A stretch of DNA of 64,000 nt from Laetmonice hystrix. Lineage: Eukaryota. The stretch covers positions 20,708,001-20,772,000 of the forward strand of contig OZ249442.1 of assembly GCA_965235115.1 (NCBI GenBank). The letters are read 5' to 3'. A model generated the notes under the pieces. That model was not told where the DNA came from, did not search any database, and worked only from the letters and a program-made list of their open reading frames with translations. Shown here one piece after another: positions 7,251 through 55,700 of this stretch; position 1 is the stretch's first letter; each line of letters starts with the position of its first letter. Position numbers and translations under genes: made by a program.

Positions 7251-7515
7251 ATTAGTGTTATTGGAAAGGGAGGGGGGGAATACCATAGAGCAGGGGAGGG
7301 GGTAGTCATGATCTCCATACCCCTGCTAGGTCTGGATCCGTGCCTGGCCTGAGGATTAGGGATAGAACTTCAGTCCCTTATACAACAAATTAGATGGAGA
7401 TGTTATCATTGGGACTCGACCGTGTATTGTGGTTTGTGGTTTGTGGTTTGTCGAAGACCGGATAGAGTAGTCCTGTGCCGATACTGCAATCTGGTAGAAA
7501 TTTCCCAATTGATAG

Positions 7516-10267
7516 ATGGAAGAGCTTTTGGACAAATTTCATGAATCATATCCTGACCAGTGGTCTCTACAAAACTGGGGTAAGTGTATATATATACTCT
7601 AGTCAAACGGATACGTAACTATATAACGGGTCAGAACGGAGAGCGTTGGTGTCAATGTCGAGAATAAGCTCCCGCTCAGTGCTGGAGAGAACGATGTCTG
7701 TCATCATGAAGTCCGAGTTACCATCGAGTAAGTCGTACACGGCGAACAGATCACAACCTCAGGTAAGTTCTTATACTCACTGAGTAATCTCACACCCACA
7801 CTCAATCATTATAATACCATAAACATTATAGAATGTCAGATACAACTTAGCGCAACTTAAAACCCTACTTCATTTTTCAATTTCCTTATAATTTATAATT
7901 GCGACATGAAAACCCAAAGTAGGGTCTAAAAAGAAGAATGTTGATAATCTTCGATGAACTGGGCATAAATGTGATTGTCTCTTTAGACTATAGACAACAA
8001 TAATTATAACCTGTTTGACATTGCGATTGTATTTATGATATCTGTTAATCAGTGTGTTCTTTCTCACAGAGGAGCCTGATTAAGAAAGTTGGTCTTGTAC
8101 TCGTTAGACGTTATTCGGATGGCCACATGAGACATTTTGTGGAAGATATAAACACAGCAGAAGTGGAAGTGGAATTAGAAATTGAGTACGTATACTCTGA
8201 AAGATAAAGTACACTACCAAGTCAAGGTTTTACAAAGATCTCTACTACCTGTTCGGATTCCAGTTTTTGCCTAAGCTATAACCTAAGATAATCCCTACTC
8301 CCTACTTTGAGAGACTTCTCCCAAAAACTCTAACCCTGTCTCCAGAAGATTAAACCTGAATCACATTTTATTTTGTTTTCTCAGACGTGGTGATCAGTTG
8401 ATCTTTGCCAAGGACGCCCTGTTGGTGGGGATGTCACACCAAGAGGTCGTCACGCATCTACGGAACCTACCGACGACATGTATTGTGGTACGTCAAATTA
8501 TCTACAATTACATGATTGCATATCAGCCTTATAATATTGATAGAAAAGGGTGAGCCCCACCCGAGTACTCAGAAAAAGGTGACCGCTATAAGCGCCGCAT
8601 GAATTCTGCGCAACCCATCCCACTTCGCATGAAGTCAGAACATATTATTAGGCCTAGAAAGAGATCTACCACTTAGGAAACCCCAGATCCTCAAAAATAT
8701 TCCCCTCGTGATCTCTTTCTGGTACTTTGCATCAATGCCTTATGTGAGGTAATTAAAAACAAATATTTAAAAAGAAAAATGACATCTGAGGAAGAGCGAT
8801 TTGGCCTGCATGCAGACCGATTTTTATGTTCGTTTTTTTAATTTTTACCAGCGTCCAGACGAACATTCCGAGGACATAACCACCGTGGTCTCACTCACGT
8901 CCAATACAGACTGGATAGGTAGGTCTATAGACTATCATAGCACACTACCACACGGTGCCGATATTATAACCACCGTGGTCTCACTCAAGTCCAATACAGA
9001 CTGGATAGGTAGGTCTATAGACTATCATAGCACACTACCACACGGTGCCGATATTATAACCACCGAGGACATAACCACCGTGGTCTCACTCAAGTCCAAT
9101 ACAGACTGGATAGGTAGGTCTATAGACTATCATAGCACACTACCACACGGTGCCGATATTATAACCACCGAGGACATAACCACCGTGGTCTCACTCAAGT
9201 CCAATACAGACTGGATAGGTAGGTCTATAGACTATCATAGCACACTACCACACGGTGCCGATATTATAACCACCGAGGACATAACCACCGTGGTCTCACT
9301 CACGTCCAATACAGACTGGATAGGTAGGTCTATAGACTATCATAGCACACTACCACACGGTGCCGATATTATAACCACCGTGGTCTCACTCACGTCCAAT
9401 ACAGACTGGATAGGTAGGTCTATAGACTATCATAGCACACTACCACACGGTGCCGATATTATAACCACCGTGGTCTCACTCACGTCCAATACAGACTGGA
9501 TAGGTAGGTCTATAGACTATCATAGCACACGGTGCCGATATTATAACCACCGAGGACATAACCACCGTGGTCTCACTCAAGTCCAATACAGACTGGATAG
9601 GTAGGTCTATAGACTATCATAGCACACTACCACACGGTGCCGATATTATAACCACCGTGGTCTCACTCAAGTCCAATACAGACTGGATAGGTAGGTCTAT
9701 AGACTATCATAGCACACTACCACACGGTGCCGATATTATAACCACCGAGGACATAACCACCGTGGTCTCACTCAAGTCCAATACAGACTGGATAGGTAGG
9801 TCTATAGACTATCATAGCACACTACCACACGGTGCCGATATTATAACCACCGTGGTCTCACTCAAGTCCAATACAGACTGGATAGGTAGGTCTATAGACT
9901 ATCATAGCACACTACCACACGGTGCCGATATTATAACCACCGAGGACATAACCACCGTGGTCTCACTCACGTCCAATACAGACTGGATAGGTAGGTCTAT
10001 ATATAGACTATCATAGCACACTACCACACGGTGCGGTCGCTAGACCTATATCCGGGCCTAGGCCGATATTACAAAATCGTCTAGTCATATCATGGTAGCC
10101 TATCTAGGTAGCCTACATGTATATGAATGAACAGACTTCACAATTCACTTTTTCTTTAACCTTTTAACCCCTAGTCCCGGTCCTTAGATCCCAAACACTC
10201 ATCTGTCCCCTGCCTTGTCTTTACTCCGGGCTAAGCCTCATTCATGAAGATGTATGCCCTGTTTACA

Positions 10268-10312
<45 letters not shown>

Positions 10313-12096
10313 ACAGACGGCCCTGAATGTCAAGCTGGAACTATCATCCCGATTGGACTAAAAGAGGATGTTATTATCAAGTCAGTCAGTGATCCCTTCA
10401 GGTGTATCAGGGGAAGAAAAGATGGAATATACGTGGGACATATGGGAGAGTCAAATGGTGAGTTCATAACAATGTGGATAGATCGACTTTCTATAATTAT
10501 ACTCTATAGTCAGGATGGGGTGGGGGTCAGTGTTGATCCCTTTTAAACCTTCTTTTTCACTTATTTTGTCAATTAATAGGGGGCATAGTCCGCCCTCCCA
10601 AGTCCCCTGGCTCCGAGCGCTAATTACAAAACTGTACCTAATGGGGCGTCTATATTGACTACAGATGCCCTCAAGTGATTTACTTTTTAAACTTGGGCCT
10701 ATAGATCCACTTTTACTTTTGGAACAAAAGCTATATGCAAGACCATATTTCTAATGGCGTAAATGAAATTGTATTCCTACAGGTCACAACGTCACTCTAC
10801 ACTACTATACACGTGTGTCACAGACTTGCCTACTTGTTGTCATGTCCTACAAATCTAGTGTATATCTCGGTATTGACGACGAGGGTAACGTATCTACTCA
10901 AGTAAGTAACATCATACAAGTGGTGCGTTTTGGGAGATAGGTCCCGTCCTGGCAACTGCTGTTATGATGAAATAATGAAACCCGAACACCGGGACAATGC
11001 CTCACTCTTATCCATAAGTGTCCAGGGTCCAGTGCAACACTCCATAGACAGTGTCACATATATACGGCCTTTGATAACCTAGCCGGGGATAAACCAAACG
11101 TGAGAGCAATAGTGTCAAAAAAAAGTAATTATTACATAATTTTAGCTGTATTCTCTCTTCGTGGTCCTATATCGTTCCAATTCCTAATTACAGGTAAATA
11201 ACGTCGCCCTGGATCGTCCCGATCAAACTGCGCTCTTTCGGTTTCATACGAAGACGGGCAGCCACAGGGTTTCGTTTGAAGCGCTGAACCTCCCTGGTAA
11301 GTGAACAGACTAGATCTGATTTCAACTTTTTGACATTTCGTCCTTAGTTGGTTGGTTAGGGTTTATCTTGTAGCCTACTGCTACTCGTCTACTAACTTAA
11401 TAACGATATGCCATTGCCTACTCGTCATCCATTGTTAATAACGATATAGACTCGTTAAAACTTACAGATAAAGCTCTTCGTTAACGAAAACGTTAACGAA
11501 TCTATCAGTGAGGGGATCCTACTTGTTATTGAAGTAGCAGTAAACTGTTATTCACTTCTACAGAAGATATCATTACCAACGAGCTTATTTAGACCTGGGC
11601 CCGGTTTTTTGGTTGAGCTTGAGACGAAAACCTCGTCTCAAGCTCACGGCCCTATACTATAGGAGTCGACTCATAGGGCCGTGAGCTTGAGACGAGGTTT
11701 TCGTCTCAAACTTGACTCAAGCTCAACCAAAAAACCGGGCCCTGGTCCCCGTCCTGTTCGTATCAATCTCATCTAGTTCTATGGGAACCTCCTAGCAGAT
11801 TTTTTAAAAATTAATTTTAAATCGAAAACACGTTCAACTTTTTCATTTCTTGCCCTCTAATTTGTCAGTTAATTATTATTTATAGCTTAAATTGGGACCA
11901 GCAAATCATGACTTGACATAGGCCAGAAATGCAACATAATTTATTTGGGGGAAAAGGGAGGTGTTCCAGCTTCATTCATCTTCAAAGGAGTTTGTCTGGT
12001 TTTTACGCAGGTCACTTCCTGGCCGTGACGAATGGCAACCTTCAGCTAACAACGGACCAGTTAAATCTGGCGACACAGTTTGATTTCTTCACCTAG
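7516..12096 (+). CDS. PDZ domain + acidic linker + IL-1-like beta-trefoil protein (~324 aa, leaderless)
   Basis: Exons 7516-7579, 7635-7762, 8070-8185, 8385-8487, 8852-8918, 10269-10457, 10783-10901, 11194-11296, 12011-12096 (975 nt, no internal stop, phases 1,0,2,0,1,1,0,1). PDZ: IKKVGLVLVRRYSDGHMRHFVEDI...ERGDQLIFAKDALLVGMSHQEVVTHLRNLP. Linker: (ED)7DTDG. C-terminal domain ends [50 protein letters not shown]. The first two exons are the least certain (55-nt intron, weak acceptor). Confidence 0.85.
8876..10034 (+). repeat. 90/105-bp minisatellite (12 units) spanning the exon 5 3' end and splice donor of the PDZ-trefoil gene
   Basis: Unit ATAACCACCGTGGTCTCACTCAMGTCCAATACAGACTGGATAG|GTAGGTCTATAGACTATCATAGCACACTACCACACGGTGCCGATATT, with optional ATAACCACCGAGGAC. 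Donor GT at 8919, 9009, 9114, 9219, 9324, 9414, 9504, 9601, 9691, 9796, 9886, 9991. Confidence 0.97.
11598..11741. mobile_element. Palindromic MITE, PIF/Harbinger-type, CTG target duplication
   Basis: GGCCCGGTTTTTTGGTTGAGCTTGAG at 11598 and its reverse complement ending at 11741; CTG at 11595-11597 and 11742-11744; nearly fully self-complementary. Confidence 0.9.
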
Positions 12097-12749
12097 CAGC
12101 TATTTTTAGACGACACTGACGCGCCATCTGGCGATAAGCATATAGTCGCAGCAGTTCCCTATTTAAGCTAACATATTAGTTTGAACGTTTCTGAGGTTTG
12201 AAACCTTACGCTGAATGCATGAAATCTATATCTAGATGTATAATTTATTGATATAAATGCGCAACTTATTTATTGATGCATTATCCATAGTACATAGTAC
12301 ATAGTGCATCCGACAATGTAGCTCACCTAGTTTTCGTTGTAAATAAACTTCAGCAACATTTCTATTTAAAAAAAAACGTATTTTCTTGTGACTAAATAGA
12401 ACACACATTACTAAGGAGGCCTGTGTGGTATAGGAGTTACACATTGGCGGACCTGCGCCTTTAGAAACCTCCACCGAACCCCGTCCAAACATGCCCTGAA
12501 CATGGCAAACATGTAAACAAACAAAAAACAACAGTCACATTGCAGATAGTATACGCATACACATGCCAGAACATTTCTTTCTCGTATAAACTATGAAAAT
12601 ATTCGGACGCGGAATTAGATATCCTCTCCCACGACCAACCTGGTACAACTTCGTACAGTCTCACATATATAATACATTCTTTCTTTTTTTATATTTTCTA
12701 TCTATTTCCCTTATTTTTGAGATCCAATTTAAGATGTAAATCCGCTGTT

Positions 12750-46778: not shown

Positions 46779-49700
46779 ATGAAGTGGAAATCGTTGACAT
46801 TAGTGGCTGGCTTTTTTCTGTGCCATATTTGTGTGACTTTTTCAAAGTCTTTACTCCGGTTAGCCGTGCCCCATAATGTGAGGCCAGGCCACGTTATCAC
46901 AGTGTTGCCCGACCAGTTCGGGCAGGAGTATAAACTCAGCGCCAGCGGGGACAAGAAACTGGCGCAACTGTTTACCGTGATGAACCAAGTGGAGTTGATC
47001 ACGACGCAAGACATTTCGGAATTCGAGGGCAATTCCGTGTCCCTACTCCTAGAGAGCGGCGGCCCGTCCAAAACATGGTCCCAAGTATTACATGTAAATA
47101 TCCAGAAAGACCCCCCAGGTGTCCATTTCTATGGCCAACCTTACGTTGGCCACATAAAAGAAAACATGCCGTCCAACACGGCCGTGTCCTCACTAAGTGC
47201 CTTGTACGACAGCATCAGCAAATTCCCAGAAACGGCATCGTTGTCTTTGGTTTCCGGGGACTTGCAATACTTCGACCTCTCCCAGAGCTCCCAGAGCGAT
47301 CAACCGTCCAAGTATTCCATCCTAAGCCGTTCGGTCTTTGACCGTGAACTCAAACCGTATTATCGGTTGCTGATACGAGCCAAAGATGCACTTTCAAAAC
47401 ACGAGGCTTATGCCGTTGTAAAGATCCACGTAGACGATGAAAACGACAATGCTCCAATCTTTGAGAAGTCGCTTTACCTGGCTCAGGTTTCGAGCAGCGT
47501 GCAGCCGCTCAAAGCTTTGCTCACAGTTCGTGCCGTTGACGCTGATAACGAGCCTGTGGAGTATAGCATGGACGACCATCATCCTATCTTTACAGTTAAT
47601 CCCAACTCCGGCGAAATTCTAGCGAAGAGGCCCTCAAAAATCCAAGCACAGCATTATGAGTTTATGGTTTATGCACGTGATTTCCGGGGTAAACACACAA
47701 CGAAGACGACTGTGCGCATCGAAGGAAGGTCAGCGACAAATGACGTCATGACGTCATCCCGCAGACGACATCGTCGTGCGATCCGTCCAAAAAAGGTGTT
47801 TGTTGTTAGCAGACGACAACGCGGAGATCTGTTCAGCGTTGCTAGTATCCCTCCAGTGCCTTTGGAAAGATATGCATTTCAGGCAGAGCCTGTCAAAAAT
47901 CTACAGATCGACCCGGAAACCGGTATGGTGTCTCTTCTAGATTCTTGGAACGATTCTGGCGACGTCGAGTTCATGATCAACATTACAAGAACAGACAACC
48001 CAAACTGTAAGTACCAATATTGTGTTAGGACATCTGTAGTAGAGAAGAACTTAAGAAATAATTGTCTACTTTTAGAAGATGACTTAAATCATCGAGGAAA
48101 TGCTGACAATCTCAGGAATCGCCAGAAGTAAGATTGCAAGACACCGATTCAATTGACGCAATATTTTGCTGAACTTCATAATAATATCCATGCAGAATAA
48201 CTAGTTCTAGTACTGCACTTGGTCACTTTTGGATGTAGGGCTACATGTACCGGTAATTACTGTCACTCAGTGCAGTGTCCAATTAATTAATCAGCAATGA
48301 AATAATTAATTGCAATTAGTATCATAACATTGTTTCATGTCTGCATAGTAAGGGTCAGCTGCACTAGAAACATCAAGCTGGGGAAAAAATCAGTAAAAGA
48401 AAATCTGTAAAATGTACTGGACCGTGAATGATTGCTATACACCATGGGATCAGGAGACAGTCATTAGATTCCCTCCACTAGGCATGTCTTATGCTGAAAA
48501 TATAAACAGAAGGGCGTATCTCGATTTGTGGAAGTGAAATAAACATGAGCCGCATGTAGATTTACGATGTATCATCTTTGAATGTATGTCATAACAGATC
48601 ATGAATAGTTAAAGCCTAGCTGCGAATCTCCCATTTAATATATTTTTGAAATGTTAAAAAGCATGCAGTATATACAGGTTCCAGTTATACACGACTGTGG
48701 CGTTATGTTGTTGAGAATATATTTCACTCATGTGGTGTTATACTCGACAATAACTTTGTTCGAACTAGAATAAGTGAGTAACTCCCTGCGAACACTTTTT
48801 TTACCACCAAATGACTGATCTCACCAGTATAAGGGCATCCTAATCCATATTCTTTAAAAGTATAAAGAACATTTATAAATGTCCTTGAAAGAGGGACTAT
48901 TTTAGTTATCGTGAAGAGAAATGTGTGAGTCAGACCTTCTTTTCACAAATAGAATCCAGACTTGGACGAACAATTAAGGCCACGGAAATTCGAGTTCAAA
49001 GGGCTTTCCGCAGGGACTTAAAGGCTTCAGTGGTTTTCTAAGGGCCATTTAATCCCGGAGCCCGCCCCTACACCCCTCCCAACGAGTTCTTGGGGTGACA
49101 CATAGGGTATAATTGTACGTGTGAATACCCAGGGCAAATAGGTAATATAAGGGAAAGATCGCCCAATGAGCGTCCGAGGGTAAACAAACTAATTCCACGA
49201 GGTTTCTCTTTGAGGGGGACTCTGCCAAGTAGATATTATCTGATTTTGATTCAAGCAGCAACTTGTGCAGTTTTGTTGTTAGAATCCAGGCCTCCAGGAA
49301 GCATGCACGGCATGCAAGCTCTGAATTTACAAATTTGGGGGCTCCCTTTTCAGTGACGTTTTCAGGCAATAAACCTTTCTGAAAATGATATATACTTATT
49401 TCTTCCTAAAACCCTGGGTCGACTAAAGTAGTCTGATCTATAGGAGCCTACGTTACGTTATATATTTCGACTGGGATAGGGAGGCGAATATATTATATTT
49501 CTGTTAGGGCAGGGAGGGGGGGGGGCACTTCGAACTTCTGACAGTCGATATGAGGCTTTGTTACATGTGTATTGCCGTTGCAGAAATTCCCTTCTTGACA
49601 ACCATGCACCCCCGGGTCCATATTTTAGTCGGTCCGTCCTCAATATGACACCGGGACACCTATTTGATAAAAACGACTCTTGAAACAACTTCCCTAGCCG

Positions 49701-52700
49701 ACATTGAACTTAATCTTTAACTGTCTGATTGTACCTGTTTCAGATCTCGATGAGATGATCGTCAAGGTGGTGGTAGAGAGCCGGGACGCCTTTTTTCCGA
49801 TCTTTACCGACGAACCCCGACCTCTGAAGGCGGTCGTCCCACTGTGGGTCCGGCCCCACACTACCATCTACAAGGTACATTCCGTCGACGCCATGAAATA
49901 CAAGATGCCTGTCAAGTACCAGCTTCAGTCGGGTGAGTGTGTGCCTGTCTGAGTAATTCACAAACAGAAAGGCTCCGTCAGGGAAAAAAGACAGGAATGT
50001 CAACTTGGAAGGGAATGTGATGATGCCCGACTTTATAGCTATTTATAGTCCCTTTTTACGGATCTTTTATGCGGATCAAATTCGTATACTTTATTCCTTT
50101 TCTCCAAGTCGTCTCCTAGCAACCATGCATTAAGCAGGTTCATTATAGATGTCTAATGGTCTTATTTTCGCGAACGTATGTCATGATTGTTATCTGCATG
50201 CAGGTTTTTCTGACTGAGACTGGCTTAATATAGCCTATAGTAAGCTGACACCATTGTATTATCCTTAACCCATCGTGTATACAGGACTACTTTGTTCGTT
50301 ACTTGCGCTTCTTCTTACCGCAGTTTTGAGGAAAAAAAATCTGGGAAAGCACAAGTGAAAAATCAGTACTCAAAGCAAAAATGCAACTGCAAAATGAACT
50401 CAAGGAGCAGTCTGCAGTGCGATCGCAGCGCCGTGCGGTGGTGCGTGCGGAATTCAACCGTATGAAATAAAATAAAATCAATATGGCGAAATGCGCCCAC
50501 AACCAGGCGGCGCTGCGATCGTACTGTGGGCAACATAGGATCATAATGTACAAAATGAAATCCTCTAATACTCGCCCCGTCTGTCTGTATCAGGAGGCAA
50601 TGGGCGGTTCACAGTGGACCCTGACAGCGGGGAGATTAAGACGTTACTGCGGCAACCGTTCGAGCGTTGTGACAAGTATGACCTGGCCATCTCGGCTCAG
50701 ATTGTTGGAGCAGCTCCTAGCCGGACCACACCGTCCCAGTTAGTTCAGGTCCACTGTGGTCACCTCCCGCCACAGTTCTACAGTGAGAATTACAACCTGA
50801 GTATGAACGAGTACGACATCAAACCAACCGAGCCGTGAGTATACGACTACAAACTGGAGAGAAAAAATTCTTAATCTTTAACTTGAATAACTTGGTCCAG
50901 AATTGTGAATGTTTACATGTAGAGCCAGGGCTTTGGCCTTAACTGTGTGCGCTTCGAATTAAAGGGGCAATTTTTAAAATTGTTTTTCCTTTTTTTTAAA
51001 AATAATTTAATTGAGGCAGTTGTTAAACAATTTAGGCCTAACGTGGTCTGATCCGCCTCCGTTTTAGCGTTGCCATCATCAAGGCCAAATCATTCTACGA
51101 GATCCCCATCGAATACACGCTGACGTCAGAAAACACAAGCGTTCCGCTCGCTTTCTCTATCGAGCGACGCACGGGGGCGCTGCGAACAATGCCTGCCAGG
51201 ATGTCGTACCTGACCGACAAACGACTGTACCGTATGGTTGTGAAAGCGTACGAGCCGGACAGCGGGTTCAGCTCGACCGCCAAGGTGAGCAGGGGAGGGG
51301 AGTCTAGACACCATGGGATAAATTAGCTGAAATAATGGGAAGCCATCTTTATGATGTTGTGATGTGGCACTAGGGGGCAGCACCAGAAAGTGGTGACGAC
51401 TTGCCCGACAGGTGGAGCCAGTAGTGTTATGGGGAAATTTCTCACCGAGTTGAGCATGCCACTCGGAAAACCAAACGTTTAAGTAAGAATAAATAATTGA
51501 CCTACTGATAGACATTTTATGGTCTTCCAACACCAGGTGGTTGTCAACTTGCGGGATATCAACGATCAGGTGCCTTACTTCGGTCCCAAAATCTACGTTC
51601 GGCGGGGTTTGCCTGAGAACACGCCAGTGGGAACTAGTGTTATTACAGGTAAGTGGTCGTGACGACAATAATTATTATTCTTGACTGGGCACTTATTGAT
51701 GGACCGTCTGGTGGATCGACTTTCATTCTGTGGCACTCCTAAGACCAATAGCCTTTTCCTGGATGTAGTTTGGGACTAGTTTTATATAAAAAAAAATGAG
51801 TGCATGCGTATGCGTAACCGTTAAGCAGAAAGTTCAGTTTTGAGAAACAAACTGGCACTGATGCTTTTATCTCTGCAGTGTCCGTAAAAATAACCACGGA
51901 TTAGCATGTGTATTTTGTACAGTCAGTTTAGGAGTGTACCCTTTAACATTATGGAATGTTGGTACATTTTAGTGTAATCATATAGTTTGTCATACCAGAA
52001 AACCTGGCTGTGTGAAGGTTGGATTCATTGTTTTCAGTGAAAGCGATTGACCGTGACGTTGGAGAGAATGCGCGGCTCACTTTTAACGTGAGCGACAGCC
52101 ATTTCCGAGTGGAGCAGCTCACTCCAGACTCTCAGACAGGAACAATCGTAGTGAACGAGTAAGTATAAAACACGCCCGCTGTGTTACTACATCAACAGTA
52201 ATCAGTGGATCCAGGCTTTAAATTACGGGGGTCCAACGTGGAAACTCCGGCAGAACGGGACTCCAAATGGGGGTCAATTAAGAACGTTTTATAAAAAAGG
52301 GAAACCTTTACGGCAAGGGTGTCGATCCCCCCCCCATGATACAGGCTGCTACTTAACAGTATAGCCTACCACCGCAAACTTCATTGAATATTTCCCCAAT
52401 CTTTTCTCCCCACCCAGTGAAAGCAGCGAGGATTGAAGCCGGATATCTCAATAGGTGTCTTTTCTTGGTTTTATTCGGAAAGAGAGTGTTTTACTATAAA
52501 AACCTGCGATTTGTCTTTCTGCCTCCCCCCACCAGGCCGCTGGATTACGACATGTTGGAGAACCGTTTCTACGAGTTCACAGTTATGGCCACTGACCACG
52601 GCTCCCCACAGAAGTCGGGCACGGCCACCGTACGGGTGTGGGTTACCAACGAGAACGACCACTCGCCCGTCTTCTACCCACTCGAACAGAAAGTCTTCAT

Positions 52701-55700
52701 CAAGGAACGATTGCCCAGTGGGACACTCATCCACGTGGTACAGGCCTATGACCCGGACGGGGCGGACGAGGGCCCGATAACCTTCAGCTTCGAGAGTGAG
52801 TTAATTTTCTTTTATTTCAGAGATGTTCATCAACCTAGAAATTTTATTATAGCTTTAGGCTTTATAGCTGCAAAGAGTTTGTAGAAGGAGGTCGTGTATT
52901 TTGACCTTATTACATTTTGAAGTTTCCCCCGAAATTTCTTTTGTACTTTAATTCCCTCTAATTTCTTTTCCACTCTCCTACCGTAATTTCCTCTTGATAG
53001 TGCCTTTGTAATTTCCTTGCCATTGTTCCTCCCAGAATCCTATGCATGTCATTGCCCTGCCCTAATGTTCTTTCCATTACCCCTCCCTAATTGCCTTTCC
53101 ATTGCCCCTCCCCAAGTGCCTTTCCATTGCCCCTCCCCAAGTGCCTTTCCATTGCCCCTCCCTAATCGCCTTTCCATTGCTCCTCCCTAATTTCCATGTC
53201 GTTGTCCCTGTTATACAGGAGGTCAGACGTTGTATGAAGATGTCCTCCGAATCGACCCGACCTCAGGCCGGATCACGCTAGCTCAAACCATGGAGACACG
53301 AAATAGATCAATGAACATTACGGTGGAGGCGAGCGATGGCGTGAACCGGGCCAGTAAAGGCTATGTTATCATCGGCTTCATCGGTGTCAACAGGCCACCC
53401 CAGTTCTTGGGTTGTACCCAGATAAGGGCCTCCCTACTCGAGGGTGAACCAGCTGACACTGGGGTCATTAACGTAAGGCCCTGTCTGGCTGGACGTTTCT
53501 CTCTCATTGCTATTGTACATGTATTTGGCCAGGTTTACTGGAAAGGCTCATTTCAGGAAGGATTTATTTTCTCCTTAGTGAAGACTAGGGGCCTATATTT
53601 ATAAAGAAAATCCCGACTTAGGGGTGTGTGTTTCATTAAGCAAAGATATTTTTGGCGAAGACATTTTGGAAGACGTCTTCGTAGTTACACTGTTAAAAGA
53701 TGGTAGTGAAACCTACTGAACCGTGTTTTTACATCTATATCGTGAGAATTATGCATAACGATTTGATACAATGTTCTCTGATCTTGACTACAGATAACAG
53801 CCTTTGACCCCGACTCGAGCGTCAATGGACAGCTACGGTTCTCTATGGTCACAGATCACCACAGGGAACAGCTCTTTGACGTGCGCATGAAGACCCCAAA
53901 CATGGCAGAAATCTTTGCTCTGAAATCTCTCGACCGAGAACGCATTGAAAGTGAGGCGGACTCTTACGTTGTTGGCAACCAGATCAAGTACCCCGTGGTC
54001 GTCAAAGTCAGCGACGAAGGCCGGCCTCCCTTATCGACTACGTGTTTCTTCTTGGTGACAATCAAGGATCGAAACGACAAGAAACCTGAGTTTGACGACA
54101 ACCCGTACCAAGCGAACATCACTCTGTCACCGCAGATTGGCTCCAAGATGATACGAGTCTATGCAACGGACGTGGATGAAGGACCCAATGGGAATGTGAC
54201 TTACTCACTGACAGAGCAGCCCAGTTCATGCTCGGATTGCTTCAGGATTGATCCCAAGACGGGCTGGATTATCCTCACAAAGTCGCTGGGACCGGTAGGT
54301 TGTTAATTCTGGCAACAGTCTGAATGTTTAATTCAAGCTATGAGACAGGATATACCTATGATGTTCGTGGAAGCATTTAGAAAATGTTTAGGCCTTGAGC
54401 CAATCAGCAATTTCATGTAGTGTTCACAATAAAAGCAAGAACCACAAGTGGAGGATCATATCTAGAAATATTAATTGGTCTATTCTGGGGTTGGGGGTCC
54501 GTAGCATTGTGCGGCCAGTACCTTTCATGTCCCTGATATATGCACCCTGTTCCCCCCAGCTGACCACCAGCCGACTGACAATGAAAGCCACTGCTCGGGA
54601 CCAGGGCACTCCGCCCAAGGAGAACTCGGTCAACGTGGTCCTGATCCGGACAGACAAGCCAAACTCTGTGCCGCCTAAGTGGATGCCCACTGGAAACAAC
54701 CAGGCCATCGAGGAACTGCTCATCACCCTGCCGGAAAACTACAAGCCGGAAACCATCCAGAACTACACGTTTCGGGTGCGCTCAACCCGGCCGTCTGAGG
54801 GCTTCAATTTCTTCATCGTCCGAGGGCGTTACGTGGAGCTCAACAAGGATGCCGACTTTGTGGCCGTCCAGGTGGAGGACCAGGAAAACACTATGAAAGT
54901 TAAAGTCGCCAGGTCACTTGACTATGAGAAGACGCCGCAATACGTTCTACAAATGAGGGCATCGGTATGTAACACGCTTTCTTCCTATTTTTGCAATTTC
55001 TTCAAGAGGGACCCTGACGACGTAGACCTATTTAGGGGCCTTTGGAAATGCTAATAATTTGTGACAGCTTTGCCATCCAAGGGGGTTGACTAAAACCAGT
55101 GGTATTTTTTAAAATATTGAATTGCGGAGCGTGACAGATCATCGCATGTTACCAGACATACCAAGGAGTTTTGAACTCGTGAAGCCAGGCCAGACAAGTG
55201 AGACCATAGAGAATTGATTTACTTACACATTCTGTAGTCTCGATAAACTGTATCTTATACTGATGACGTGTTTGTAGTACCTGGACCTGGACACCAGGGA
55301 GCGCTCCGACACCCACCTGAGGATTCAGTTGACGGACGTGAACGACAACAGTCCCAATTTTATCGGCCAGGACGAGAACGGTATCTTCCCGGCAGCCGTG
55401 TCGGAGGAGTCGCCAGCTGACACGGTGGTGGCCTCCGTGTTCGCCATCGACAGGGATGGCACCTCCCGCTACAACACAGTCAGTCACTGCTTACTGTCTC
55501 CGTCTCTCTCTCTCCATCTTTTTATCTGGCCCCCCCTTTGACTCCTGCTCAGTTCAACTGGCACCCCGCCATGTTTCGTGGGAGGCCAGTTCATAATAAG
55601 AAACAAGATAGGATTTGGTTACGAACAGAGATACGCATTTTGTAAGAGAATGGTAGGTTGGTCCCACTTCAGCTTCTGGGACCTCAGCCCCTCTCGTCCT

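What the first reader, a model, noticed from the sequence alone, without database searches (positions are those of the whole stretch)
7516..12096. Hidden leaderless PDZ + interleukin-1-like beta-trefoil gene in an invertebrate-type genome
Seen: nine short exons splice in phase into a ~324 aa ORF that the six-frame track misses. It has no signal peptide, a PDZ domain, an acidic linker and a ~148 aa C-terminal domain. By-eye alignment to mature IL-1beta (recalled sequence): LLVVMSYKSSVYLGIDDEGNV ~ [51 protein letters not shown] ~ [44 protein letters not shown] ~ VFLGGTKGGQDITDFTM. About 6 of 9 fixed positions of the IL-1 signature (as I recall it) match. Established: IL-1 cytokines are leaderless precursors whose C-terminal ~150 aa trefoil is released by proteolysis, and they were long regarded as vertebrate-specific. 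Inference: this is an ancestral-type IL-1-like cytokine whose prodomain is a PDZ that could tether it to membrane scaffolds until cleavage. I have an unverified recollection that divergent invertebrate IL-1-like proteins have been reported, so novelty needs checking.
Basis: partly seen in the sequence, partly recalled or inferred. Interest (0 to 1): 0.92.

Follow-up and report, generated by a model that had tools for sequence, protein, structure and literature searches.

The report
PDZ-plus-trefoil IL-1anc-type cytokine gene
The nine-exon gene is real and encodes a leaderless protein with a PDZ domain, an acidic linker and a trefoil-like C-terminal domain, which is the architecture of the 'ancestral IL-1' (IL-1anc) family published in 2025-2026, so it is a correct rediscovery and not a new kind of gene.

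Summary
Nine GT-AG exons (7516-12096, + strand) join in phase into a 324-aa ORF with no hydrophobic leader. A profile of exon 4 hits solved PDZ domains (E about 1e-5). An (ED)n linker ends in DDTD just before a 148-aa C-terminal domain.

Four further loci in the same genome carry this gene family. Three keep the PDZ-then-trefoil exon order, exon lengths (116, 103, 103 nt) and intron phases. The fifth was fetched only from the linker onward and has the linker and first trefoil exons fused. So the PDZ and trefoil parts belong to one gene.

The architecture matches IL-1anc (Fontenla-Iglesias et al., Nat Ecol Evol 2026; preprint 2025): short, leaderless, N-terminal PDZ, C-terminal IL-1 trefoil, (F/L)ES-type motif. 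Introns 5-7 have phases 1,1,0, as reported for the last three IL-1beta introns.

Limits: no sequence search links the C-terminal domain to IL-1 or to any other trefoil family. The fold could not be predicted, because the spliced protein has no reference. No RNA data exist. Exons 1-2 and the choice among seven equivalent exon-5 donors are unresolved.

Verdict: probable new member (one of at least five paralogs) of a known family. The scan also flagged another IL-1-like candidate elsewhere in this genome (s1-327602).

The parts
7516..7579 (+). Exon 1 (ATG at 7516; tentative)
   Evidence: ATG preceded by an in-frame TAG; donor GTAAGT. Not conserved in paralogs. Polymorphisms here are partly non-synonymous.
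7635..7762 (+). Exon 2 (Ser-rich, probably disordered N-terminal region; tentative)
   Evidence: AG/GT bounded and in phase. Carries 3 non-synonymous and 1 synonymous variants, plus an in-frame CAG insertion allele.
8070..8185 (+). Exon 3, N-terminal half of the PDZ domain
   Evidence: 116 nt, phases 0 to 2. Length and phases are identical in paralogs B, C and D. tblastn matches to paralogs.
8385..8487 (+). Exon 4, C-terminal half of the PDZ domain (GDxL...SHxEVV helix region)
   Evidence: 103 nt in all four loci examined. The profile of this exon plus paralog B hits Scribble, Par-3, MAGI, MPDZ and afadin PDZ domains in PDB, best E 1.3e-5; nearly all of the 60 listed hits are PDZ chains.
8852..8918 (+). 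Exon 5, post-PDZ linker (RPxE...TVV)
   Evidence: Conserved with paralog B exon 5' and fused to exon 6 in paralog E. Its 3' half and donor are repeated in the following minisatellite.
8876..10034 (+). Minisatellite (90/105-nt units, 12 copies) duplicating the exon-5 3' end plus the GTAGGT donor
   Evidence: TRF. The first seven donor copies are open and in phase with exon 6.
10269..10318 (+). Start of exon 6: acidic (ED)n linker ending in DDTD176, directly before G177
   Evidence: GAGGAC x7.3 repeat. The DDTD position is read from the translation printed. Caspase-type DxxD|G is an inference by analogy with DEPD184 of SpurIL-1.3.
10319..10457 (+). Exon 6 remainder: first part of the C-terminal trefoil-like domain (conserved D-V-I-x-K-S-V-x-x-P block)
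   Evidence: 39-42% identity to paralog B. K-S-V and P are invariant in five paralogs. Exon ends in phase 1.
10783..10901 (+). Exon 7: middle part of the trefoil-like domain
   Evidence: 119 nt, phases 1 to 0. Counterparts of 125-140 nt in paralogs B-E.
11194..11296 (+). Exon 8: F-R-F ... S-F-E-A-L-N-L-P-G motif block
   Evidence: 103 nt in all five paralogs. LF is invariant. F279 to F290 is 11 residues, and FEA begins 27 residues after the phase-0 intron.
12011..12096 (+). Exon 9: H-F-L-A-V ... F-D-F-F-T and stop codon
   Evidence: Acceptor in phase 1. [HY]-[YF]-L-x-V and F-D are conserved in four paralogs. TAG at 12094-12096.
12342..12347 (+). AATAAA polyadenylation-type signal
   Evidence: Only AATAAA/ATTAAA in the 600 nt after the stop, 246 nt downstream.
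11593..11745 (.). Palindromic MITE-like insertion in intron 8 (not part of the gene product)
   Evidence: Inverted-repeat sequence. Depth in DNA runs is 14,000-52,000 against about 50 in the flanks.

Best explanation
This is a protein-coding gene of the IL-1anc type. The product is a short cytosolic (leaderless) pro-cytokine. It has a poorly conserved N-terminal stretch, a PDZ domain (exons 3-4), a linker and a C-terminal domain of about 148 aa. That domain is most probably an IL-1-type beta-trefoil.

Shown here: the exon structure, the PDZ, the absence of a leader, the acidic linker, the conservation of the whole architecture in at least four further paralogous loci, and IL-1-like intron phases.

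Inferred by analogy with the published sea-urchin and lamprey proteins: the gene is induced in phagocytes on immune challenge. The precursor stays in the cytoplasm. A caspase-type protease cuts in the acidic linker (candidate DDTD176|G177) and frees the trefoil. The trefoil leaves the cell by an unconventional route and acts on an Ig-TIR (IL-1R-like) receptor.
For: - Gene model: nine canonical exons in phase.
- PDZ: an exon-4 profile hits solved PDZ domains almost exclusively, best E 1.3e-5. Weak Pfam PDZ hits on paralog exons sit at the right profile positions.
- One gene, not two: paralogs B (C7:8.34 Mb), C (C7:8.32 Mb) and D (C21:10.29 Mb) keep PDZ exons followed by trefoil exons, with identical phases and exon lengths of 116, 103 and 103 nt. 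In paralog E (C7:31.57 Mb) the linker exon and the first trefoil exon are fused. A versus B: blastp E 2.5e-26 over 272 aa at 28% identity.
- Constraint: both listed variants in the PDZ exons are synonymous, and none of the 40 variants printed lies in the trefoil exons. The N-terminus and linker carry six non-synonymous changes.
- Family definition met: PMC13736523 defines IL-1anc as proteins under 500 aa with no signal peptide, an N-terminal PDZ, a C-terminal IL-1 trefoil with an (F/L)ES-type motif in beta9, 3-5 trefoil exons and conserved phases of two central introns. It reports lineage-specific expansions and failure of BLAST/HMMER across phyla.
- Intron phases: here the trefoil has 4 exons and introns 5, 6, 7 have phases 1, 1, 0. 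The last three IL-1beta introns are reported as (1,1,0).
- Motifs: F-x-F, then 10 residues, then F-E-A, then x3, then P-G-x-F corresponds to the 'F-F' and 'FES-PG-WF' motifs reported as the conserved core of IL-1.
- Internal repeat: units 2 and 3 of the domain align in register at about 5 sd above column shuffles, as expected of a trefoil.
- Other trefoils: Pfam FGF and AbfB models find genuine FGF and AbfB exons elsewhere in this genome but nothing here.
Against: - No sequence method ties the C-terminal domain to IL-1. Pfam IL1 gives nothing, and IL33_bt gives only E 0.22 on exon 8, the same level as noise hits on other exons. PDB searches with single exons and with 2-5-sequence exon profiles give no IL-1 chain.
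- The motif is FEA, not FES. It degrades in the paralogs (LEV, TLR, TFA, SFT).
- The signature match (6 of 9) has a chance rate of 5-10%.
- The fold was not modelled.
- No RNA evidence.
- No close relative in 1.8 billion cluster representatives or in the word-indexed database.
- The published synteny partners (eIF2A, GRIP/GCC2-type, ESD) lie on another contig, and no TIR gene lies within 5 Mb.
- Phases 1 then 0 are, from my memory, also those of FGF genes, so phases alone do not exclude an FGF-like trefoil.
Confidence: 0.75

Rival explanations
1. A real PDZ-plus-C-terminal-domain gene family, but the C-terminal domain is not of IL-1 descent. It is either another beta-trefoil lineage (AbfB/otogelin-type, FGF-like, fascin- or ricin-type) or a different beta-rich fold. 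The resemblance to IL-1anc would then be convergent or superficial.
For: - No significant sequence link to IL-1 by any search.
- The FES-like motif is not kept in the paralogs.
- The locus lacks the published IL-1anc synteny.
Against: - Pfam AbfB and FGF models detect true members exon by exon in this genome but not these exons.
- hmmscan of every exon against all of Pfam lists no trefoil family except IL33_bt, and that is at noise level.
- As far as my literature search found, IL-1anc is the only described family that combines a single N-terminal PDZ, no leader, under 500 aa and a C-terminal trefoil.
- Intron phases 1,1,0 and the spacing of the motifs fit IL-1.
Confidence: 0.15
2. The model is partly wrong, or the locus is not expressed as drawn. 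Exons 1-2 may be spurious, the product may be longer because a later copy of the exon-5 donor is used, or this copy may be a decaying paralog.
For: - No RNA run exists for the organism.
- Exons 1-2 have no counterpart in paralogs and carry mostly non-synonymous variants.
- Seven identical in-phase donors follow exon 5.
- Nothing similar is annotated in public protein sets.
Against: - Exons 3-9 are intact and bounded by good splice sites.
- They are conserved in length and phase with the paralogs (three to four loci per exon), and no frame defect is seen.
- Variants in the PDZ exons are synonymous only.
- A polyadenylation signal lies 246 nt after the stop.
Confidence: 0.1

Closest known systems
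IL-1anc family (SpurIL-1.1-1.5 of the purple sea urchin, PmarIL-1.2/1.3 of the sea lamprey, fish nIL-1F); Fontenla-Iglesias et al. 2026 (PMC13736523), Eggestol et al. 2020 (PMC7144542)
   Same: - N-terminal PDZ, linker and C-terminal trefoil-sized domain.
- No signal peptide and under 500 aa.
- FE(S)-type motif late in the domain.
- Trefoil split over 3-5 exons with conserved central phases.
- Several paralogs per genome.
- Not detectable across phyla by BLAST or HMMER.
- Acidic DxxD-type candidate cleavage site before the trefoil.
   Different: - The motif is FEA (LEV and others in the paralogs).
- An extra phase-1 intron splits the FE(A)..PG / HF motif.
- The locus is not next to eIF2A, GCC2, ESD, TRAF3 or an Ig-TIR gene.
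- The linker is an (ED)7 repeat.
- No direct sequence or structure comparison with published members could be made here.
Classical vertebrate IL-1beta / IL-1 family (Pfam PF00340; PROSITE IL-1 signature, accession recalled as PS00253)
   Same: - Leaderless precursor with the active trefoil at the C-terminus.
- The last three IL-1beta intron phases (1,1,0) equal introns 5-7 here.
- 'F-F' and 'FES-PG-WF' motif positions are mirrored by FRF and FEA..PG.HF.
   Different: - No Pfam IL1 match, and the signature matches at only 6 of 9 positions.
- The pro-part is a PDZ domain, not an IL1_propep or an unstructured segment.
- One additional intron.
Other beta-trefoil families (AbfB PF05270, FGF PF00167)
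   Same: - Domain size of about 150 aa.
- A repeated x-P-G-x-[YF]-L-type strand motif.
- FGF genes also have phase 1 then phase 0 introns (my recollection).
   Different: - The Pfam models find genuine members elsewhere in this genome but not these exons.
- To my knowledge none of these families is joined to an N-terminal PDZ in a short leaderless protein.

Membership tests
IL-1anc (PMC13736523) | N-terminal PDZ domain | tested here: met
   The exon-4 profile hits PDZ domains of Scribble, Par-3, MAGI, MPDZ and afadin in PDB, best E 1.3e-5. Weak Pfam PDZ_6/PDZ/PDZ_4 hits on paralog exons. Single exons of the window gene alone give no Pfam hit, and PF13180 run over the genome does not list them.
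IL-1anc (PMC13736523) | C-terminal IL-1-type beta-trefoil fold (defined by structure prediction) | not testable with these tools
   The domain is split over four exons, so no reference exists for the spliced protein. No database homologue with an id was found. The only indirect sign is an in-register internal repeat between units 2 and 3, about 5 sd above shuffles.
IL-1anc (PMC13736523) | (F/L)ES-type motif in beta-strand 9 | tested here: inconclusive
   S-F-E-A at residues 289-292, at the expected place (position 114 of 148). Paralog B has S-L-E-V; the others have T-L-R, T-F-A and S-F-T. The paper calls the motif 'largely' or 'often' conserved.
IL-1anc (PMC13736523) | No signal peptide; length under 500 aa | tested here: met
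   324 aa. No hydrophobic stretch (maximum KD9 of 1.0 in the first 68 aa). Caveat: the 5' end is not confirmed by RNA.
IL-1anc (PMC13736523) | Trefoil encoded by 3-5 exons with conserved phases of the two central introns | tested here: met
   Four exons. Introns 6 and 7 have phases 1 and 0, and intron 5 has phase 1. IL-1beta's last three introns are (1,1,0) (PMC4880838). The paper's numeric phases are only in a figure and could not be read.
IL-1anc (PMC13736523) | Microsynteny with GCC2, ESD, EIF2A, TRAF3 or an IL-1R-like gene (supporting, not obligatory; extra copies lie outside these loci) | tested here: not met
   eIF2A, GRIP-domain and ESD-type hits are on contig C10. The nearest TIR hits on C7 are at 0.30 and 26.29 Mb. 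The window's neighbour is a cadherin gene. TRAF3 was not searched.
IL-1anc (PMC13736523) | Immune induction, cytoplasmic or nuclear pro-form, caspase processing | not testable with these tools
   No RNA runs for the organism. The DDTD176|G177 site is only a sequence observation.
Classical IL-1 (Pfam PF00340 / IL33_bt PF15095 / PROSITE IL-1 signature) | Significant match to the family profile or full signature | tested here: not met
   No PF00340 hit on any exon or in the window. IL33_bt reaches only E 0.22 and 11.9 bits, and nothing genome-wide. The signature matches 6 of 9 positions, reached by 5% of shuffles. Only exon pieces could be scanned.
AbfB-type and FGF trefoils | Match to PF05270 or PF00167 | tested here: not met
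   Both models find other loci in this genome above their cut-offs (52 and 32 bits) but none in the window. hmmscan of the exons lists neither.

The most novel reading that the evidence does not exclude
The five paralogs may form a lineage-specific, fast-evolving PDZ-trefoil clade. In it, minisatellites seeded on exon 3' ends plus their donors create arrays of equivalent in-phase splice donors (exon 5 here, exon 8 in paralog C). This would give length-variable, possibly polymorphic linkers between pro-domain and cytokine, a diversification mechanism not described for IL-1 genes.
Probability: 0.1. Interest if true: 0.55.

Novelty: new member of a known kind. Interest (0 to 1): 0.35.

Why it matters
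Laboratories published that architecture as the ancestral IL-1 family only in 2025-2026. This shows the scan can find such hidden, multi-exon, fast-evolving cytokine genes.

For biology, the gain is modest. It adds a set of at least five IL-1anc-type genes in a species with no close annotated relative in the protein databases. These are candidates for studies of inflammation in invertebrates. The window gene keeps the most IL-1-like motif block and a clean DxxD site at the linker/trefoil border, which makes it a convenient substrate for caspase-processing tests.

Tried and rejected
- RNA evidence: two run searches found only four DNA runs of one sample. Laying them showed contigs running through the introns and no spliced joints.
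- Full-length homologue in the databases: the exon-6 piece against 1.8 billion representatives gave only spurious repetitive bacterial proteins (CARDB, MshEN). The exon-6 ORF against the word-indexed database gave nothing. The ESM Atlas feature search on the piece was uninformative.
- Pfam on every exon of the window gene and of four paralogs gave nothing beyond noise.
- PDB sequence searches with single exons and exon profiles gave nothing for the trefoil exons.
- Pfam IL1 over the genome gave two sub-threshold hits elsewhere. Both hit loci (C18 and C3) show no relation to this family by tblastn.
- Synteny: the 200 kb around eIF2A holds no family member by tblastn or exon HMMs.
- Supplementary sequence tables of the IL-1anc papers are not held.
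- Whole-domain Pfam, AlphaFold and fold search were left out.
Full report
**Observation.** Reading 7300-12400 and assembling the proposed exons gives nine + strand exons: 7516-7579, 7635-7762, 8070-8185, 8385-8487, 8852-8918, 10269-10457, 10783-10901, 11194-11296 and 12011-12096. Every intron starts with GT and ends with AG. The exons join to 975 nt, which is 324 codons plus TAG. The intron phases are 1, 0, 2, 0, 1, 1, 0, 1. An AATAAA lies 246 nt after the stop. The N-terminal 68 residues have no hydrophobic core (maximum 9-residue Kyte-Doolittle mean 1.0), and the protein has no TM-like stretch. Exon 6 opens with a GAGGAC repeat that encodes (ED)n and ends in DDTD176. The C-terminal domain G177-T324 (148 aa) follows directly.

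**Limits of the gene model.** The only public runs that hold this DNA are four runs of one sample. Their contigs run straight through the introns and show no spliced joints, so they are DNA. There is no transcript evidence. Exons 1 and 2 rest on splice signals and the open frame only. They have no counterpart in the paralogs, and most variants there change the protein (Q15H, E22G, S34C, E39D, plus an in-frame CAG insertion allele). Intron 5 holds a minisatellite (8876-10034, units of 90 or 105 nt, 99% alike) that repeats the 3' half of exon 5 together with its GTAGGT donor. Of the 12 donor copies, the first seven are all open and in phase with exon 6. The product could therefore carry 0 to 195 extra linker residues, and 324 aa is the shortest form.

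**The PDZ is real.** Single exons give no Pfam hit, because the domain is split by an intron. A two-sequence profile of exon 4 (window gene plus paralog B, A1) finds PDZ chains almost exclusively in the PDB. Examples are Scribble (E 1.3e-5), Par-3 (3.1e-5), MPDZ, MAGI, afadin, PTPN13 and Dlg1, aligned over the GDxL...SHxEVV part of the domain. Paralog exons give weak Pfam PDZ hits at matching profile positions.

**PDZ and trefoil parts belong to one gene.**
- Searching the window's own genome (627 Mb, 35 contigs; the window is C7:20,708,001-20,772,000) with exon pieces and exon profiles found four further loci.
- These are B at C7:8.339-8.343 Mb, C about 20 kb upstream of B, D on C21:10.29 Mb (minus strand) and E at C7:31.57 Mb (minus strand). 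They were modelled.
- B, C and D have PDZ exons followed by trefoil exons on one strand. Exon 3 is 116 nt and exon 4 is 103 nt in all of A-D. Exon 8 is 103 nt in all five paralogs.
- All phases are the same where modelled.
- A and B align over 272 residues at 28% identity (blastp E 2.5e-26).
- In E, the linker exon and the first trefoil exon are one exon, which ties the two halves together directly.
- Among the 40 variants printed (of 70), the two in the PDZ exons are synonymous and none falls in the trefoil exons. Intron 7 alone has six. This pattern is consistent with purifying selection on the two domains.

**What the C-terminal domain is.** Sequence methods do not answer this.
- Against all of Pfam, the exons of the window gene and of four paralogs give only noise. 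IL33_bt reaches E 0.22 on exon 8, and equally weak unrelated hits appear on other exons.
- Pfam IL1 and IL33_bt run over the genome do not touch the window.
- PDB searches with exons and with 2-5-sequence exon profiles return no IL-1, FGF or other trefoil chain.
However, 5% of shuffled domains do as well.
- Pfam FGF and AbfB do pick up genuine exons of those families elsewhere in this genome (32 and 52 bits) and nothing here. This argues against the AbfB and FGF rivals.
- Within the five-paralog alignment, units 2 and 3 of the domain align in register (L-x-[YF]-[YF] ... [YF]-L-x ... hairpin). The hhalign score is 12.9 against 7.5 +/- 1.1 for column shuffles. Units 1 and 2 are marginal. This is a weak sign of trefoil pseudo-symmetry.

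- The paper defines IL-1anc as proteins under 500 aa with no signal peptide, an N-terminal PDZ and a C-terminal IL-1 trefoil bearing an often conserved (F/L)ES motif in strand 9.
- Members were found from cnidarians to fish, with lineage-specific expansions. [quoted passage not shown]
- The trefoil is encoded by 3-5 exons, with conserved phases of two central introns.
- Fish nIL-1F is an earlier-recognised member (PMC7144542).
- The last three IL-1beta introns are reported as phases (1,1,0) (PMC4880838). Introns 5, 6 and 7 here are 1, 1, 0.
- A survey of IL-1 proteins names 'F-F' and 'FES-PG-WF' as the conserved core motifs (PMC12108812). The window gene has F277-R-F279, then F290-E-A, then x3, then P-G-H-F.
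- From my memory of human IL-1beta (not checked with a tool), the F-to-F spacing (11 residues) is the same, and the distance from the phase-0 intron to the motif is close (27 residues here against 26). An extra phase-1 intron after P-G is peculiar to this family in this genome; all five paralogs have it.

**Synteny does not add support.** eIF2A, two GRIP-domain hits and the ESD-type esterase all lie on contig C10. The nearest TIR hits on C7 are 5 Mb or more away. The 200 kb around eIF2A contain no family member. The paper notes that additional IL-1 genes lie outside the conserved loci, so this does not count against membership.

**Mechanism.** Shown here: the architecture. Inferred from the published experiments on sea-urchin and lamprey proteins:
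- The gene is induced in phagocytes, and the pro-form is cytoplasmic.
- A caspase cuts at an aspartate in the linker (DEPD184 in SpurIL-1.3; here DDTD176|G177 sits exactly at the linker/trefoil border).
- The trefoil is released by an unconventional route and signals through IL-1R-like receptors.

**Verdict.** The finding is real and well read, but it belongs to a family already in the literature. I put membership in IL-1anc at about 0.75. The missing piece is the fold, which could not be computed here because the spliced protein has no reference, and no database relative with an id exists. The paralogs found here may or may not include it.

Noticed in passing
window 8876-10034: Minisatellite of 12 units (90/105 nt, one of 97). 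Each carries the 3' half of exon 5 and a GTAGGT donor. The first seven donors are open and in phase with exon 6, so alternative or polymorphic linker lengths are possible. DNA-run contigs break inside the array.
   Followed up: partly
L015:5954-9331 (G000:C7:8321954-8325331): Paralog C has the same kind of feature. A 54-nt minisatellite of more than 3 kb repeats the 3' end of its exon 8 with a GTAAGT donor. It stays open in frame for hundreds of codons.
   Followed up: partly
window 11593-11745: Palindromic MITE-like element of about 155 bp in intron 8. Its k-mer depth in the DNA runs is 14,000-52,000 against about 50 for the flanks, so it is a very abundant repeat family.
   Followed up: no
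window 46779-55054 (+): Large exons of a cadherin/protocadherin-like gene (Pfam Cadherin, E down to 1.5e-16). The best database relative is 68% identical on an ENA contig. The next are 33% or less, so the organism has no close annotated relative.
   Followed up: partly
window 7759: In-frame CAG insertion allele in exon 2, present in two of three DNA runs. There is also dense SNP variation (about 1-2%) across the locus, consistent with high heterozygosity.
   Followed up: no
G000:C10:9.77, 20.55 and 21.72-21.74 Mb: The ESD-type esterase, eIF2A and two GRIP-domain hits all lie on contig C10. These are the partners of the inferred ancestral IL-1anc locus, so a sixth, syntenic IL-1anc gene may lie there. 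Only 200 kb around eIF2A were searched.
   Followed up: partly
G000:C12:21.12-21.49 Mb, C20, C5: Clusters of intronless TIR-domain genes with TLR-sized open frames (open frames of 770-1200 aa).
   Followed up: no
L016:9619-9906 (G000:C7:31.57 Mb, minus strand): Paralog E has exons 5 and 6 fused. It carries a basic R-R-K-Q-K-R-G-K-R-T-R-R stretch where the window gene has the acidic (ED)n linker. This stretch looks like a possible NLS; the paper reports predicted NLSs in the N-terminal regions of many invertebrate IL-1anc proteins.
   Followed up: no
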